Shown: in pieces, positions 850-11,452 of the stretch
Layout of the letters: each line of letters starts with the position of its first letter
Position numbering within the stretch: position 1 is the first letter of the stretch
Program-made: the position numbers and the translations under genes
Assembly (NCBI GenBank): GCA_964035545.1
Contig: OZ037767.1
Span: forward strand, 26,056,628 to 26,120,627
DNA from: Bugula neritina
Lineage: Eukaryota > Animalia > Bryozoa
Reading direction: 5' to 3'
DNA: 64,000 nt
Notes under the pieces: generated by a model
Database searches by the model: none
The model's input: the letters and a program-made list of their open reading frames with translations, nothing else
What the model was told of the DNA's origin: nothing

Positions 850-3800
850 CTATGGGCCACCACAATCAACTGGATTTCCTGAACATTCTGTCATCTTTTC
901 TAGCCTAAGTTCTTCAACAAATATAAAGAACGAGGAGTTCCAACCTGTGTACGCGTTTCCAACTTGCATGCCTCTACATTCCATTGTGTTGTATGTAATA
1001 GACCTTGTTCCTGGTAGCACATCATGGCAGATGCCACTTACTAGAAACATACAGGCGCATGCAGGTGGTTTATATTTCAATGTGCAAGCAAGCAAGCAAT
1101 AAGAATCAAGTTGCATCACAGATCATGATATGCTGCATACCATTTTGTGAACAATTGTATAGCCTAAAATAAAATATTGTAATAACTTTCCATGCTTTTT
1201 ATCATGCAGTTTTCCAAGCTATTTTACATTTACTATGTTAACTAATGCTACTATACTATGTGTTACATTTGACATTTAAAATCATTTAACTCATCCTTCT
1301 TGGATGATGAAATATAGCAACACAACAATTTTTGTTTTACAGTAATTATCGTACCTTGCATAGGGTGATGATAAACGTTGGCATAGTTTATATAACTTTG
1401 ACCTGATATTTCACCTGGTGTTGTGCAAGGAGAACCATCTATTTCAAAATACCTGTCAAAAGTATTCATTGACATTTCATTTCACAATCTCAATAAAATA
1501 ATTGGGAATTAGCGTTGTAAGCATTTAAAAGTTTAAATTATATTTATCTATGTTAGTTAGTGAGGGTCTAGCCAGTTTTATGCCTAGCATTTATAGAACA
1601 TTTACATAATCTGTCTTTAGTCTGGAAAAAGTGTGAACGTTTAACAGACATAAAAGAGACTAAAATAGACAAAAAATCCAAATTAACGATAAGCACCATT
1701 TAATTGGTCATTAAAATTTTAGTGACAGTAATTATTTCATTTCTACCACATTTTTCTGCTTAGCAATTTTCTGCTGTTTGTATCTCGTGTAAGACTTATT
1801 CACAGACTATTTATCATGTGTTTCGTCCAACGAGTGTGTGGCTGGTCATAACAAGAGGATAACTCACAAAAATCGTCACACGAAACTCGTGAGAATCACA
1901 CGAGTTCCGTGTGATTCTCACAAGCGTGAGACCAGGCCCTAAACCCTAATGTATCTAGCTATGAAATACAGTAACAATTGCAGCTGATGTCGTGGAAAAT
2001 CTATTGCAAATATTTTAGTCTTCAGCTTCGTTTGACAGAGTCAACCTATAAATTCTGAAGAACTGTATTTATTGTAGTAAATCGCTTTTTCTAATTGAAA
2101 TTATTGCAAACAACTTCATGAAAATATTTCATTATCGGCAAAATAAATCAGCTAATCAACCAATTAATTGTTAAGAACATAATAATTGTACAGATTTTAA
2201 TTAATTAAACTAAAAAAATTTGCCAAACTTTGATTGAAATTAAGCCAAAGTTGAGTAAATTTAACTGCGCATAAATAAGCTAAAGAGAAATGTGAAAAAG
2301 AAATGTGAAAGAGAAACGTGAAAGAGAAATGTGAAAAAGAAATGTGAAAGAGAAATGTGAAAGAGAAATGTGAAATAGAAATGTGAAAGAGAAATATAAA
2401 CTTCTTGTAAGACAATAACAGATATGTGTTGAGTGACATGCTTAAGCCAACAGTATGAACTATGACTGGGTATATTATAAAGACATACCACTTGACACAG
2501 CAGTTTCCTGAGCCAGATCCAGCAGACTTGTGAGCACCTGTTGAGGTGAGTCGAAGCGCTGTATCAGCAAACTGCTTGTCATAGCTCACTGTCACGATAG
2601 TGCCATCATCTGTGTCATCATTTAATGAAGGCCAATAATAACTTTGCAAGTGACCAACCAAGCTTCTGTAGATTTGCTGTTGACTGCCATGAACTAAAAC
2701 ATGATAGTTAAATGTAGTAACTTCCTTTTGTGTTATGTTAAACTGATGCTGGTATAAAAACTTGCAGGCATTCTACACTCAAGTCATATAACTGAATTTT
2801 GTGCTTCTAATTAGCAAATGTGTAATCTTCATTTACTAAAATAGATCAATTTGTTTTAATTTGATAAATTTGAAAAGCATAACCTGTGTAGTGTTTGTTC
2901 TGGCGAACCGTGAATTGGTTTTTAAAAGAATTATTGCTATCTGTGCAAATCTCGCATAGCTCTATCACTGTGATTTATAACAACTGGCAATATATAATGC
3001 GTGTATGTATTTATATAAATGAATAGCACTTGAAGGCTCTTAATGCATTCATTTATGTGAAATATATATAAATACATGCAGGAGATATAATGCAGATATT
3101 TAGTTGATAATAATAATCTCCTACTTGTATGAAACACAAGATAAAGTAAGGAACAAAAGACACATAGTAGTTGTCTTACCAGCATCTACTCTTTGCTGAG
3201 ATCTTACTTCCTCTATATGTATTCTAGAAGGGGAGTTGAAACCACCCGTAACAAAATGGGTTGGTTCACTGTTATCATCTATGCATTTGCCCAAGTATAT
3301 TTCTACACTGTAGACACCAGATGGCAGTTGGTTCTCACAAATGCCTTCAACTGAACACCATATGGGTTAATATCACTCAAAGTGTACACAGTAACAGAGT
3401 GTACACAGTAACAGAGTGTATGTATGCTGAGTGAAAAAAGGTGTATGCAGCAGCAAAGTGTATACAGTGGGTAGCAAAGTGTATACAGCAGGTAGCAAAG
3501 TGTATACAGTGGGTAGCAAAGTGTATACAGCAGGTAGCAAAGTGTATACAGTAGGTAGCAAAGTGTATACAGCAGGTAGCAAAGTGTATACAGTAGGTAG
3601 CAAAGTGTATACAGCAGGTAGCAAAGTGTATACAGTAGGTAGCAAAGTGTATACAGTAGGTAACAAAGCAAATCAGCAATCATTCAAATATTTCCTTGGT
3701 CAGTGCAAATGCAATTTTAATCATATAGGAAAAGGTAAAGCAATAGGTTTATATTTGCACCAATAAATATGCCTAAATTTACAATATTGTTTACTATAAC

Positions 3801-9800: not shown

Positions 9801-11452
9801 TTTAAGCTGTTAATTGATTTAGCATAACTTAATTACAATAAGTCTATATATGATAATTGACGATATGAAAAAGTCTGTCAATAAATTTATTATGCTAAGG
9901 CTAAAGCTATAGCAAATGGATGCTGTATAGCCCTTTTTAGTTATTGATTTTTAGATTATGCATATTTATATAAAATTTTTGTTATAACATCTAATATATT
10001 ATAATATGTATATATAAATATATTATAGGTGAGTATGATTTTATTTAAATATCCTGAAGATAATGTTGATTTTTATTTTGAATTGTAATACCTTTTCTAC
10101 ACAAACGAATTAGAATATTTTTAGACTGATATATTGATGCATTAGGTATAGGTTAGCAATAATAATGTTGCTACACTTTGCAAACACATGCACACAATAT
10201 AACATACTACTAGCTGTGTACAATATTACCGCAGTATGTGCTATATTTCTAAACTGGCAATTGATATAATTTAGTCCCAGTTCACGTTTTAGTTTCTAAA
10301 TAGAAAAAAATTTTGTAATAAAAGATTTCAAATAGCTAGAACAGTAGATACTCTTAAAACTATATTGCCAGTTTTTGCTGACTCCTAATTTATAATGACT
10401 GTAATTTGTAACCACTTTGATTTTTTTAGTATACCAGTAGACAAAGCCTATAGTTGATGATATAATATTATATTATCAACTTGAACAGTTTCCAGTTGTG
10501 CAAATTATAGCTTCATAGCGATGGGGCCTACTTTTTGACTTTTTGTACGGAGCCTCTTTATGAGGTAGATTAGAATATGAGTATATGCTAAATAAGCTAA
10601 ATAATTGAATAATTGATTATATGAATTATTTAGTGTTTATATCCCATAAATAACTGTATATGAGCTATATTTGGCGTCTTACACTATTGAGTAAAAACTA
10701 GAAATCCTTCGTGACCCGCTGACCTTTATACTGACCTTGCTGCCGCTCTTAGAAAAACTCACCATCTTGTGTGTAGAATGCTGCCTGACATGCATTCTTT
10801 GAGCTGATACAGTTCACCACACACTCTAGCTTACTTCTAGCATCAACTATCCTGTCCACTTCTGCACTCTGTTCAGATAAATCGACATTCTTCTCAACTG
10901 GAATTTTGCTGGTTGTACAGCTCCCCAAGTCTAAAAGAGCAACTTTTACTTTTGCAGATTGTACAGAGCACCAAGAGATAAAACTTGAAGACTGGATTGC
11001 TTTTGTCTGATATAATCATTATAGCTACATATCATTTTGGTCTACAGATACCGTGATCATTTCAATAATAGTAAAATTTTAAATACAATAAAAATGTATT
11101 TTGAAAGATGTTTATAGGCATCTTCTATTACTAACTATAGGTATTACCACAGCCATATTGATTAATGGTTAAATATATAGTTCATAAACATAGTTTCTAT
11201 TTGGGTTTCCTCATTAGTATCTAGCCTTTTTTATAGCATAGACTACTCATACAATGGTTCATAGTCAATAAAGCTACTTAACCTACAAAAATTATACTGC
11301 TGAACTATTTTATATAACAAAGTAAGGGTGGCTAATGGTTTCACCCTAAATTTCAAGCCTGAGGTCACCCTACCTAAGGCTGATTCAGTTGATCCGTTGA
11401 GAGTGAGCAGTAGGATGCTGTAAACAAACCCTTCAACTCCTTTCAGCTTCAT
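850..11452 (-). CDS. Secreted protein: signal peptide + PAN/Apple-like + small Cys-rich module + 3x CTHRC1 C-terminal domain, no collagen repeat (14 exons, ~627 aa), copy A, intact
   Basis: Exons 11452-11374, 10930-10763, 8742-8648, 8262-8172, 7289-7189, 6785-6587, 6198-6043, 5111-4999, 4544-4438, 4015-3906, 3350-3180, 2693-2489, 1452-1355, 1040-850. All are GT-AG with matching phases, totalling 1884 nt with no internal stop. Signal peptide MKLKGVEGFVYSILLLTLNGSTESA; PAN-like ARSKLECVVNCISSKNACQAAFYTQDGVC. CTHRC1 motifs occur three times: LCNHWYLTFNGNKC..IDGTC..ALTGWQ..LVIEI; CGRWYIGVNGSEC..VEGIC..GFNSPSRIHIEEV; WPSLNDDTDDGTI..CCVKWYFEIDGSPC..VSGIC..AYTGWNSSFFIFVEEL. Confidence 0.88.
1664..1942. 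mobile_element. ~280-bp segment present only in unit A, ending in a probable MITE terminus with a 14-bp hairpin
   Basis: Unit B reads gagactaaccctaatg across the site (CTAA microhomology). Contains gtgagaatcacacg-agttc-cgtgtgattctcac (1889-1921) and ends ...gtgagaccaggccc-taa, resembling a PIF/Harbinger-type end. Only one end is recognisable. Confidence 0.5.
2282..2395. repeat. 13/14-bp minisatellite (aaagagaaatgtg)n
   Basis: Direct tandem units in intron 12; about three units shorter in unit B (~35258-35332). Confidence 0.9.
3452..3661. repeat. 21-bp minisatellite x10 (agcaaagtgtatacagYRggt)
   Basis: Ten tandem units; source of the SKVYTVG/SKVYTAG pseudo-ORFs. Confidence 0.97.
4288..4398. 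repeat. 32-bp minisatellite (attggcatataatacaatagaaatataataca)
   Basis: About 3 units in A. B (~38378-38523) has one extra unit plus 3 bp, matching the offset change from 34090 to 34125. Confidence 0.85.
6846..6902. other. Perfect 26-bp-arm hairpin, 5-nt loop
   Basis: caaaaaaaattagaatatactagaat-gcttt-attctagtatattctaattttttttg; copy at 40971-41027. Confidence 0.9.
8309..8632. repeat. Compound microsatellite (gtgtgtgtt)n + (gt)n
   Basis: Directly visible in intron 3 of the CTHRC1-like gene. Confidence 0.99.

What the first reader, a model, noticed from the sequence alone, without database searches (positions are those of the whole stretch)
850..11452. Collagen-less triple-CTHRC1 protein fused to a PAN/Apple-like domain
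Seen: 14 exons, mostly invisible in the ORF track, splice into one ~627-aa ORF of signal peptide, PAN-like domain, CxxxxCxxxxxC..PVC module and three highly diverged CTHRC1 C-terminal domains, with no Gly-X-Y run. Known: canonical CTHRC1 is a small secreted protein with a short collagen helix that trimerises a single globular domain, and PAN domains mediate protein or carbohydrate binding. Inference: three domains in one chain could form a single-chain asymmetric pseudo-trimer that needs no collagen helix, with PAN adding a recognition module. I do not recognise this architecture as described.
Basis: partly seen in the sequence, partly recalled or inferred. Interest (0 to 1): 0.85.

Follow-up and report, generated by a model that had tools for sequence, protein, structure and literature searches.

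The report
Single-chain triple CTHRC1-domain secreted protein
A marine invertebrate gene (probably from a bryozoan) encodes a secreted protein with three CTHRC1 head domains in one chain and no collagen stalk, and models of a relative fold the three heads into one C1q-like "trimer"; the family already sits unstudied in public databases.

Summary
A minus-strand gene of 14 GT-AG exons (11452 to 850) gives a 628-aa open frame. It encodes a signal peptide, a PAN-like half-domain, a five-cysteine module and three CTHRC1_C (PF25815) domains, with no Gly-X-Y run. Spliced RNA contigs from a close relative join exons 5 to 11 and exons 12 to 13, including the bridge from domain 1 to domain 2. Exon 3 is not secure, and exons 1 to 4 have no RNA support.

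The architecture is not unique. Lingula anatina has at least six "uncharacterized" RefSeq proteins with PAN_1 plus two or three CTHRC1_C domains. They align collinearly with this gene at about 27% identity. This scan has already reported the same family on other DNA of this genome.

An AlphaFold model of a relative (pTM 0.73) superposes on engineered single-chain C1q and adiponectin trimers (Z 24-25, against about 7 for single domains). A controlled three-chain test gave only weak support. So the pseudo-trimer idea is supported by prediction on a relative, not shown for this protein.

The gene is the first unit of a 34-kb tandem array. Units 2 and 3 lose the normal exon-10 donor at the duplication junction. 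This is a new variant of a known kind, of moderate interest.

The parts
11374..11452 (-). Exon 1: ATG at 11452; signal peptide MKLKGVEGFVYSILLLTLNGSTESAL; donor GTAGGG, phase 1
   Evidence: Hydropathy of GFVYSILLLTL is 2.14. 93.7% identical, without indels, in the related genomic contig L002, against 84-88% for the introns.
10763..10930 (-). Exon 2: first half of the PAN-like domain (C...LEC-x3-C-x6-C-x2-AFY); donor GTGAGT, phase 1
   Evidence: A local profile of the N-termini of the Lingula and P0008 relatives hits it at 21.8 bits, E 2e-6, at the expected profile positions. tblastn of P0007 residues 29-88 matches it. No Pfam hit on its own. Splice sites and frame are kept in L002, 91.7% nucleotide identity.
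9408..9505 (-). Exon 3, candidate a (uncertain): second half of the PAN-like domain, GISLLNTLYGLAFTIICSTYQQKKFLPVYDVRK; enters in phase 1, leaves in phase 0
   Evidence: An exon with length of 2 mod 3 is needed between exons 2 and 4. For: GI(S)LL aligns with GICSLL of Lingula P0054, and L002 reads GICLL with the PAN cysteine in place. Against: weak splice score, about rank 12 of 36 candidates; no more conserved than the flanking intron, with a 1-nt deletion in L002; the acceptor AG is AA in copies 2-4.
9217..9260 (-). Exon 3, candidate b (alternative, mutually exclusive with a): ELFYGLPIVNKCALE; donor GTGAGG
   Evidence: Splice sites are kept in all four copies and it carries a C-x-L motif. 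The acceptor is weak and the cysteine spacing is less PAN-like. L002 does not reach it.
8172..8262 (-). Exon 4: cysteine module HDNCNGMECSNNEICFLGCREEVLDSPVCL
   Evidence: It aligns with CSGAPCAVAGTCRGDC..VC of the Lingula proteins. Local profile hit of 11.8 bits, E 0.0024, at profile positions 105-130.
7189..7289 (-). Exon 5: start of CTHRC1_C domain 1
   Evidence: The RNA contigs that end at 6786 run on into ...QDDRDSGSVM, the end of this exon (loose ends).
6587..6785 (-). Exon 6: middle of domain 1 (C-NHWYLTFNGNKC)
   Evidence: Pfam PF25815 positions 27-83, 34.1 bits. RNA joint 6587|6198 with GT..AG ends.
6043..6198 (-). Exon 7: end of domain 1; the donor lies before the in-frame stop at 6029-6031
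   Evidence: Pfam positions 94-137, 40.3 bits. The RNA joint to exon 8 (listed as 5111|6045 with two odd letters, which is a synonymous GAA>GAG) bridges domain 1 to domain 2.
4999..5111 (-). Exon 8: linker and start of domain 2
   Evidence: RNA joints on both sides.
4438..4544 (-). Exon 9: domain 2, ends ...CGRW in phase 2
   Evidence: RNA joints 4998|4543 and 4435|4012. This exon does not show in the ORF list.
3906..4015 (-). Exon 10: domain 2
   Evidence: RNA contig 3906-4012 and a 10-letter loose end that reads the start of exon 11. The donor ACAG|GTATTA is intact only in copy 1.
3180..3350 (-). Exon 11: end of domain 2; donor GCTG|GTAAGA lies before the stop at 3121-3123
   Evidence: Pfam positions 95-137. 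RNA contig 3180-3339. A contig over 2901-3209 at about a tenth of the depth marks a retained intron 11.
2489..2693 (-). Exon 12: linker and start of domain 3
   Evidence: Pfam positions 3-60, 32.2 bits. RNA contig 2486-2694 and the joint to exon 13. The linker motif RVDA|V spans the exon 11/12 junction and matches DISAV of the relatives.
1355..1452 (-). Exon 13: middle of domain 3
   Evidence: RNA joint 2486|1449, cut +3.
850..1040 (-). Exon 14: end of domain 3, a C-terminal tail with two more Cys, stop at 852-850; AATAAA at 810-805
   Evidence: Pfam positions 95-137, 33.8 bits. RNA contig 850-1042. Sequence.
34100..45593 (-). Copy 2 of the gene in the next 34-kb unit. Exons 1, 2 and 4-9 are identical; exons 11-14 are about 98% identical; the exon-3a acceptor is AA; the exon-10 donor is replaced at the duplication junction and followed by 1.13 kb of extra DNA (36865-37993)
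   Evidence: Copy 3, beyond the window, is the same as copy 2.

Best explanation
This is an intact, expressed member of a lophophorate family of secreted proteins with the order signal peptide, PAN-like module, small cysteine module, three CTHRC1_C domains, and no collagen stalk.

Shown here: the exon structure, the three domains, the lack of Gly-X-Y, splicing across exons 5-11 and 12-13 in RNA of a close relative, and collinear homology to full-length Lingula proteins.

Inferred: the three diverged jelly-roll domains fold back on each other into one C1q/TNF-like head, a pseudo-trimer made from a single chain. The covalent linkers then do the job that the collagen triple helix does in ordinary CTHRC1. 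Because the three 'protomers' are different sequences, the head is asymmetric, like the A/B/C head of C1q, and can offer three different faces.

More speculative: the protein works outside the cell as a binding or recognition molecule for matrix, glycan or microbe. The N-terminal modules would add or anchor a second binding site. The large, tandemly amplified family diversifies specificities, by analogy with bivalve C1q-domain proteins.
For: - **Gene model:** 14 exons, 628 aa, all GT-AG.
- **Domains:** three PF25815 domains on the exon pieces. A local profile places them at residues 146-292, 298-458 and 466-612.
- **RNA:** GT..AG joints 6587|6198, 6043|5111, 4999|4544, 4438|4015 and 2489|1452, plus loose ends linking exons 5/6 and 10/11. 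All are seen in runs X1 and X2 and none in the DNA run X3.
- **Selection:** 11 synonymous against 4 non-synonymous among the 15 exonic RNA-versus-genome differences listed.
- **Relatives with the same order of parts:** Lingula P0007, P0054, P0055 and P0012, and the contiguous 611-aa ORF on a transcript-like contig, P0008.
- **Collinearity:** local blastp of the model against P0054 covers 32-612 against 24-594, E 3e-56.
- **Fold of relative P0008:** pTM 0.73, with domain blocks at pLDDT 70-90.
- **Structural matches:** the top Foldseek hits are all single-chain trimers: 4DOU, 5HKJ, 5HZF, 4ZCH. VIA-align gives Z 25.2, rmsd 3.4 A over 338 of 402 residues to 5HZF, against Z about 7 for the best single-domain matches.
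- **Three-chain test** on the separated domains of P0008: score 0.41 (runs 0.45, 0.40, 0.41) against a best control of 0.17, verdict weak support. The mark was reached by 51 of 78 solved complexes and 2 of 108 mismatched pairs. At 0.60 or under it was reached by only 5 of those 78 solved complexes and by all 4 mismatches that passed (of 180). The runs agree in at least 84% of contacts, and the partner's pLDDT is at least 78.
- **Functional analogy:** the mussel protein HcC1qDC6, with three tandem gC1q domains, binds bacteria, LPS and peptidoglycan (PMC5519582).
Against: - The structure was predicted only for a relative that is about 27% identical, with a 9-sequence alignment. Single-chain C1q-type constructs exist in the PDB and may bias the packing.
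- The controlled test gave only weak support.
- The exon 11/12 and 13/14 junctions and exons 1-4 have no RNA joint here. Exon 3 is unresolved.
- The RNA is 94-97% alike and mostly does not carry copy 2's variants. It therefore comes from a close relative or another allele or paralogue, not demonstrably from this copy.
- Two-domain relatives exist (P0006, P0010, P0014), and they cannot close a trimer alone.
- Positional orthology of the three domains across phyla is not resolved by the tree or by scores.
- There is no functional evidence of any kind.
Confidence: 0.68

Rival explanations
1. The three domains do not close on themselves. They behave as independent beads, or pair between chains, for example three chains forming three mixed trimers, or two-domain and three-domain family members combining.
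For: Two-domain family members exist. The three-chain test passed only weakly. The fold evidence comes from a relative with a shallow alignment. The model has 27 cysteines, an odd number, which leaves room for an intermolecular disulfide.
Against: A pTM of 0.73 for a 611-residue chain with about 125 disordered residues implies confident mutual placement of the domains. The whole three-domain block superposes on single-chain C1q at Z 25. The short inter-domain linkers are conserved between phyla.
Confidence: 0.2
2. This locus copy is a decaying member of a recently amplified array rather than a working gene, with the PAN half already eroding.
For: The PAN C-x-L cysteine is replaced (Ser in copy 1; Arg, Arg and His in copies 2-4) while a related species keeps Cys. 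Exon 3a loses its acceptor in copies 2-4. Copies 2 and 3 lose the normal exon-10 donor at the duplication junction. Copy 4 holds only exons 1-3.
Against: Copy 1 has an open 628-aa frame with canonical sites throughout. Spliced RNA of a close relative covers exons 5-14 at even contig depth, with an 11:4 excess of synonymous changes. Exons 1 and 2 are more conserved than the introns in L002.
Confidence: 0.1
3. The stretch holds two or three separate genes: PAN plus domain 1, then domain 2, then domain 3.
For: In-frame stops lie just past the donors of exon 7 (6029-6031) and exon 11 (3121-3123). A retained-intron contig after exon 11 has about 10% of the exon's depth and would give a two-domain product.
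Against: An RNA joint links exon 7 to exon 8. Exons 8 and 12 have no start codon or signal peptide. The phases fit across both boundaries. The relatives, including one contiguous ORF, are collinear over all three domains with conserved linkers.
Confidence: 0.03

Closest known systems
Lingula anatina LOC106162620 (XP_013395411.1, 603 aa) and its paralogues LOC106180315, LOC106178942, LOC106165752 and LOC106180490; also an anonymous 611-aa ORF from run SRR32924703
   Same: The same order of parts: signal peptide, PAN_1, the C-x4-C-x5-C-x3-C...C module and three CTHRC1_C domains, with no collagen. They are collinear with this gene over about 580 residues, and the inter-domain linkers are conserved.
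   Different: Only 23-28% identical. Those proteins keep the PAN C-x-L cysteine and reach the Pfam PAN_1 cut-off. All are annotated 'uncharacterized', and no paper mentions them.
Canonical CTHRC1 (vertebrates, cnidarians; Pyagay 2005; Leclere et al. 2020, PMC7058181)
   Same: A secreted protein with the same C-terminal domain family (PF25815), which that paper modelled as a C1q-like beta-sandwich able to form trimers.
   Different: CTHRC1 has one domain per chain and a short Gly-X-Y helix that trimerises three chains. Here there are three domains per chain, no Gly-X-Y, and added PAN-like and cysteine modules. The paper reports collagen-less C-terminal domains only in choanoflagellates, dinoflagellates and bacteria. 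It does not mention bryozoans or tandem domains.
Engineered single-chain trimers of C1q/TNF-family heads (scC1q 5HKJ/5HZF, single-chain adiponectin 4DOU, single-chain APRIL-BAFF-BAFF 4ZCH) and the natural A/B/C heterotrimeric head of C1q
   Same: The predicted three-domain block of the relative superposes on them as a whole (Z 22-25, rmsd 3.4-3.8 A, 337-352 residues). Like the C1q head, it would be an asymmetric trimer of three different modules.
   Different: Those single chains are man-made fusions, whereas this one would be natural. Sequence identity is 7-9%. There is no Pfam C1q or TNF match.
HcC1qDC6 of the mussel Hyriopsis cumingii (three tandem gC1q domains; PMC5519582)
   Same: A natural secreted invertebrate protein with three tandem domains of the same structural superfamily and no collagen stalk. 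It belongs to a large, lineage-specific expansion.
   Different: The domain family is different (gC1q, not CTHRC1_C), and it has no PAN or cysteine module. Its immune role was tested by bacterial and PAMP binding and by knock-down. Nothing has been tested for the family described here.
Oscarella pearsei EP00118_P015510 (784 aa)
   Same: Several CTHRC1_C domains (four) in one chain.
   Different: It keeps a collagen repeat and has an fn2 domain. It has four domains rather than three and no PAN.

Membership tests
CTHRC1 sensu stricto (signal peptide + short collagen helix + one C-terminal domain) | N-terminal signal peptide | tested here: met
   Two lysines (K2, K4) followed by an 11-residue hydrophobic core, mean hydropathy 2.14. 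This rests on hydropathy only; no dedicated predictor was on hand.
CTHRC1 sensu stricto (signal peptide + short collagen helix + one C-terminal domain) | Short Gly-X-Y collagen repeat (12 repeats in mammals) | tested here: not met
   No run of three or more G-X-Y in the 628-aa model. No Pfam Collagen hit on any exon piece or on the PAN-bearing relatives.
CTHRC1 sensu stricto (signal peptide + short collagen helix + one C-terminal domain) | CTHRC1 C-terminal domain (PF25815) | tested here: met
   Present three times, not once. Exon pieces score 32-40 bits against a cut-off of 27. Three full envelopes are found with a local profile.
C1q/TNF-like jelly-roll trimers (structural superfamily) | Jelly-roll beta-sandwich in each unit | tested here: met
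   Tested on relative P0008, not on the window's protein. The domain blocks are all-beta with pLDDT mostly 70-90. Single domains match TNF-like lectins, C1ql3, Caprin-2 C1q and TWEAK at Z 4.6-7.2.
C1q/TNF-like jelly-roll trimers (structural superfamily) | Three units packed round a threefold axis | tested here: inconclusive
   Prediction on the relative: Z 25.2, rmsd 3.4 A over 338 residues to scC1q 5HZF. The three-chain test gave 0.41 against a best control of 0.17, weak support. There is no experiment, and the window's own sequence was not folded.
C1q/TNF-like jelly-roll trimers (structural superfamily) | Sequence membership (Pfam C1q or TNF) | tested here: not met
   No C1q or TNF family hit on the exon pieces or on the relatives. 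No PDB sequence match to P0007.
PAN/Apple domain (PF00024) | Profile match over the curated cut-off | tested here: inconclusive
   The window's exon 2 gets no hit at E up to 1. Six relatives score 21.7-25.8 bits against a cut-off of 21.4, over the stretch that aligns with exon 2.
PAN/Apple domain (PF00024) | Conserved cysteine framework, including the C-x-L cysteine | tested here: inconclusive
   The first four cysteines are in place. The C-x-L cysteine is Ser in copy 1, Arg or His in copies 2-4, and Cys in the related contig L002. Another Cys lies 14 residues further on.
PAN/Apple domain (PF00024) | PAN fold (helix packed on a beta-sheet) | tested here: inconclusive
   The model of Lingula P0007 residues 28-160 has a mean pLDDT of 54.7. 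Foldseek gives no significant match (best E 0.28). Still, HGF N domain, Sarcocystis SML-2, plasminogen, prekallikrein apple and leech antiplatelet protein fill the top of the list.
Lophophorate PAN + cysteine module + 3x CTHRC1_C family (unnamed; Lingula LOC106162620-like) | Collinear homology over all modules and linkers | tested here: met
   Local blastp gives E 3e-56 to P0054 and 1e-55 to P0007 over about 580 residues. The cysteine module and the linkers (SC-x-x-L-x-x-FN and EE-x-R...AV) are conserved.

The most novel reading that the evidence does not exclude
Lophophorates (bryozoans and brachiopods) carry an old, expanded family in which the collagen-tied CTHRC1 homotrimer has been replaced by a natural single-chain, asymmetric C1q-like head built from three diverged domains. 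This is the arrangement that protein engineers built by hand for C1q, adiponectin and TNF-family ligands. Its three non-equivalent faces would evolve separately as a recognition surface.
Probability: 0.5. Interest if true: 0.6.

Novelty: new variant of a known kind. Interest (0 to 1): 0.45.

Why it matters
CTHRC1 is studied heavily in fibrosis, cancer and Wnt/PCP signalling, yet its head domain has no solved structure, and no sequence relative of it is in the PDB. A natural protein that carries the whole trimeric head in one chain would be a convenient object for solving that structure. It would also let one ask which faces bind what. It would show that evolution reached the same solution as engineered single-chain C1q/TNF ligands. 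For bryozoan and brachiopod biology it marks a large, tandemly amplifying family of secreted proteins that may serve recognition or matrix functions. The locus also shows a duplication junction that falls exactly on a splice donor, so array growth here makes altered gene copies.

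Tried and rejected
- **Pfam on exon 2 alone** gave no PAN hit.
- **A profile search with alignment A1** found nothing new.
- **A search with exon 2** found only a 59-aa genomic ORF of a related species. This led to contig L002, which covers exons 1-3 but not exon 4.
- **A sequence search of the PDB** with P0007 found nothing.
- **Choosing exon 3.** I tried a splice-site matrix trained on this gene's other introns, conservation in L002, a profile of the relatives' N-termini and comparison of the four copies. 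None settles it. I also considered using both candidates together, but that gives a TAG at the junction.
- **Positional orthology of domains 1, 2 and 3 across phyla.** The tree groups the Lingula domains by position but leaves the deep forks open. The window's domains 1 and 3 pair with the two domains of Bugula KAF6026444. Pairwise scores favour the diagonal only for domains 2 and 3.
- **Foldseek on the low-confidence N-terminal model** gave no significant match.
- **Collagen exons near CTHRC1_C clusters.** None appears among the 157 matches found, but only 150 of 1558 candidates were scored, so this is a weak negative.
- **RNA variants against copy 2.** Only 2 of 19 agree, so the RNA is not from copy 2 or 3.
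- **Literature.** Searches for the accessions and for CTHRC1 in bryozoans or brachiopods found nothing.

Full report
**What is there.** The window is AT-rich animal DNA (about 32% G+C). On the minus strand between 11452 and 850 I rebuilt a gene of 14 exons from stop-free segments, splice sites and reading phases. The exons are:

| Exon | Coordinates | Exon | Coordinates |
|---|---|---|---|
| E1 | 11452-11374 | E8 | 5111-4999 |
| E2 | 10930-10763 | E9 | 4544-4438 |
| E3 | 9505-9408 | E10 | 4015-3906 |
| E4 | 8262-8172 | E11 | 3350-3180 |
| E5 | 7289-7189 | E12 | 2693-2489 |
| E6 | 6785-6587 | E13 | 1452-1355 |
| E7 | 6198-6043 | E14 | 1040-850 |

All introns are GT-AG. AATAAA lies 40 nt after the stop.

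Pfam's CTHRC1_C model (PF25815) matches the exon translations. It gives three separate C-terminal ends (profile positions 94/95-137) plus one N-terminal and one middle piece. A local profile places three full domains at residues 146-292, 298-458 and 466-612. There is no Gly-X-Y run, and there are five N-glycosylation sequons (one of them in the signal peptide) and 27 cysteines. The intron positions repeat: one in phase 2 inside C-x-x-W|Y and one in phase 1 before x-G-I-C. Domain 1 has lost the first of these.

**How the spliced model was handled.** Exon pieces were searched by reference only. The joined translation was made only inside local scripts. There it served to count length, to look for Gly-X-Y, and to align against proteins that the tools had already returned. 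For that reason the structure of this gene's own protein was not predicted.

**One transcript or several.** Two runs labelled as RNA-Seq of a 'symbiont metagenome' (X1, X2) hold contigs 94-97% like the exons. Laid on 850-6849, they show intron-skipping joints with GT..AG ends at five exon boundaries: 6/7, 7/8, 8/9, 9/10 and 12/13.
- Loose ends read on into exon 5 and exon 11.
- The DNA run X3 shows none of these joints.
- The 7/8 joint is the bridge from domain 1 to domain 2.
- No joint was listed for 11/12 or 13/14. However, the contig ends fall exactly on the predicted sites, and contig depths are even across domains 1-3 (about 300-370 in X1).
- The conserved linker motif (RVDA|V here, DISAV in relatives) spans the 11/12 junction.
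- A contig over intron 11 at about a tenth of the depth suggests a minor retained-intron form that would stop after domain 2.
- Of the 15 exonic RNA-versus-genome differences listed, 11 are synonymous, as expected for coding sequence under constraint.
- The RNA carries only 2 of 19 of copy 2's variants. It therefore comes from a close relative, another allele or another paralogue. It shows the splicing pattern, not expression of this very copy.
- Exons 1-4 lay outside the one stretch I could lay.

**Exon 3 is the weak point.** Exon 2 ends in phase 1 and exon 4 starts in phase 0, so an exon with length of 2 mod 3 must lie between them. Thirty-six candidates qualify.
This aligns with GICSLL of a Lingula relative.
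- A 1.9-kb genomic contig of a related species (L002) reads GICLL there, with the PAN cysteine in the expected place.
- Against this, the stretch is no better conserved than the surrounding intron and has a 1-nt deletion in L002.
- Its acceptor is AA in copies 2-4, and its 'cysteine' codon reads AGT, CGT, CGT and CAT in the four copies.
- A second candidate (9260-9217...NKCALE, donor GTGAGG) keeps its splice sites in all four copies, but it has a weak acceptor and less PAN-like spacing.
- Only cDNA can decide. The rest of the model does not depend on the answer.

**Relatives and the PAN label.** A full HMMER scan with exon 6 found 40 proteins, several with two to four matched stretches.
- Pfam shows PAN_1 plus two or three CTHRC1_C domains in Lingula anatina XP_013395411.1 and five other proteins. 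PAN_1 scores 21.7-25.8 bits against a cut-off of 21.4.
- It shows two CTHRC1_C domains in Bugula neritina KAF6026444.1, and collagen plus four CTHRC1_C domains plus fn2 in an Oscarella protein.
- P0008 is a contiguous 611-aa ORF on a 2.6-kb contig of a public run. It is independent evidence for one reading frame through all modules.
- The model aligns collinearly with these proteins from the PAN region to the last domain (E about 1e-55, 23-28% identity). The cysteine module and the linkers are conserved.
- A profile of the relatives' N-termini picks out exon 2 (E 2e-6) and exon 4 (E 0.0024) among 253 stop-free segments of the region.
- So the PAN label is right at the level of the family and degenerate in this copy.
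- The Bugula protein matches another locus of this genome at 81-85% identity. The genome is 216 Mb. By inference the organism is a bugulid bryozoan, close to but not identical with the sequenced B. neritina.

**Fold.** AlphaFold2 on P0008, with a nine-sequence alignment, gave a mean pLDDT of 68 and a pTM of 0.73. The first 125 residues were disordered and the three beta-rich domains were mostly at pLDDT 70-90.
- Foldseek's five best PDB matches are all trimers in one chain: single-chain adiponectin, single-chain C1q head, single-chain APRIL-BAFF-BAFF and a Cbln1 trimer.
- VIA-align superposes model residues 156-604 on single-chain C1q (5HZF) at Z 25.2, rmsd 3.4 A over 338 of 402 residues. The best single-domain matches reach Z about 7.
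- I then gave the three domains of P0008 as separate chains to the controlled complex test. It scored 0.41 (runs 0.45, 0.40, 0.41) against a best control of 0.17, with the verdict weak support.
- That mark was reached by 51 of 78 solved complexes and 2 of 108 mismatched pairs. At 0.60 or under it was reached by only 5 of the 78 solved complexes and by all 4 mismatches that passed (of 180). The runs agree in at least 84% of contacts, and the partner's pLDDT is at least 78.
- The N-terminal module of a Lingula relative folded poorly (pLDDT 55). It gave no significant match, although PAN/apple structures dominate the weak list.

**What is known.**
- Leclere et al. 2020 (PMC7058181) define Cthrc1 as a collagen repeat plus the C-terminal domain, and they model that domain as a C1q-like sandwich able to trimerise.
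- They list collagen-less domains only outside animals. They mention neither bryozoans nor tandem domains.
- No paper in the library names the Lingula accessions.
- Three tandem gC1q domains in one chain are known from a mussel immune protein, HcC1qDC6 (PMC5519582).
- This scan has already reported PAN + triple-CTHRC1 genes on four other stretches of this genome, with the same reading. My result agrees with those reports and was reached from this locus's own data.

**The locus.**
- The 34.1-kb unit that holds the gene is repeated in tandem. Copy 2 lies in the window and copy 3 just beyond it.
- Identity is 99.7% from the exon-10 donor upstream but about 96% over exons 11-14 and downstream.
- Copies 2 and 3 carry unrelated sequence, plus 1.13 kb of extra DNA, exactly from the last two bases of exon 10 onward.
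- The duplication junction therefore sits on a splice donor. Copy 1 is the only unit with the ancestral exon 10/11 intron. Copies 2 and 3 would need cryptic phase-1 donors 8-10 codons further on.
- A fourth, partial copy with exons 1-3 only lies about 84 kb beyond copy 3.
- The genome holds at least 89 CTHRC1_C exon matches in clusters on four contigs. PAN-like exons lie inside the cluster on contig 5.

**Verdict.** The single-chain pseudo-trimer is the best-supported mechanism, but it rests on predictions for a relative. Function is unknown; extracellular recognition is an analogy, not a finding. The architecture is undescribed in the literature, yet it is already present in public databases and in earlier reports of this scan. 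I therefore rate it a new variant of a known kind, with moderate interest.

Noticed in passing
window 3905-3915 and 36865-37994: The junction of the 34-kb tandem duplication falls exactly on the exon-10 splice donor. Identity between units drops from 99.7% to about 96% at this point. Copies 2 and 3 carry 1.13 kb of extra DNA and lose the donor ACAG|GTATTA. In-frame cryptic donors lie 8-10 codons further on.
   Followed up: partly
window 1656-1941: An insertion of about 286 bp lies in intron 12 of copy 1. It is absent from copy 2 and is skipped by one DNA contig of run X3. Its word depth is 20-70 times that of the flanks in all runs, so it is a high-copy element. It has an internal 17-nt hairpin at 1886-1924 and is probably a small non-autonomous mobile element.
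   Followed up: partly
G000:C3:26218300-26220500 (about 84 kb beyond copy 3): A fourth, partial copy holds only exons 1-3 (100%, 96.9% and 95.1% identical). Exons 4-14 were not found in the 12 kb fetched.
   Followed up: partly
window 850 and below: A 1640-nt RNA-run contig starts at the exon-14 acceptor and runs about 1.45 kb past the stop codon, although AATAAA lies 40 nt after the stop. This could be a long 3' UTR, read-through or DNA carry-over; it remains unexplained.
   Followed up: no
window 8290-8640, 3380-3680, 2270-2400, 4250-4420: Long microsatellite and minisatellite arrays sit inside the introns: (CA)n grading into (CACACAA)n, a 21-nt unit repeated about 14 times, a repeat of about 24 nt (TTTCACATTTCTC-type), and an AT-rich repeat of about 30 nt. 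They create long spurious ORFs in the ORF list.
   Followed up: no
window 12465-12837 and 19133-19500 (and their copies at 46606-46978 and 53274-53641): A dispersed repeat of about 370 bp at 86% identity occurs twice within each 34-kb unit.
   Followed up: no
G000 contigs C5 8.08-8.48 Mb, C9 9.1-10.4 Mb, C8 6.1-6.4 Mb, C1 2.8-4.2 Mb: There are large clusters of CTHRC1_C exons on C5 and C9, and of PAN-like exons on C8, C1 and C5. On C5 the two kinds interleave, and some hits repeat at about 34-35 kb spacing, which suggests further tandem arrays.
   Followed up: no
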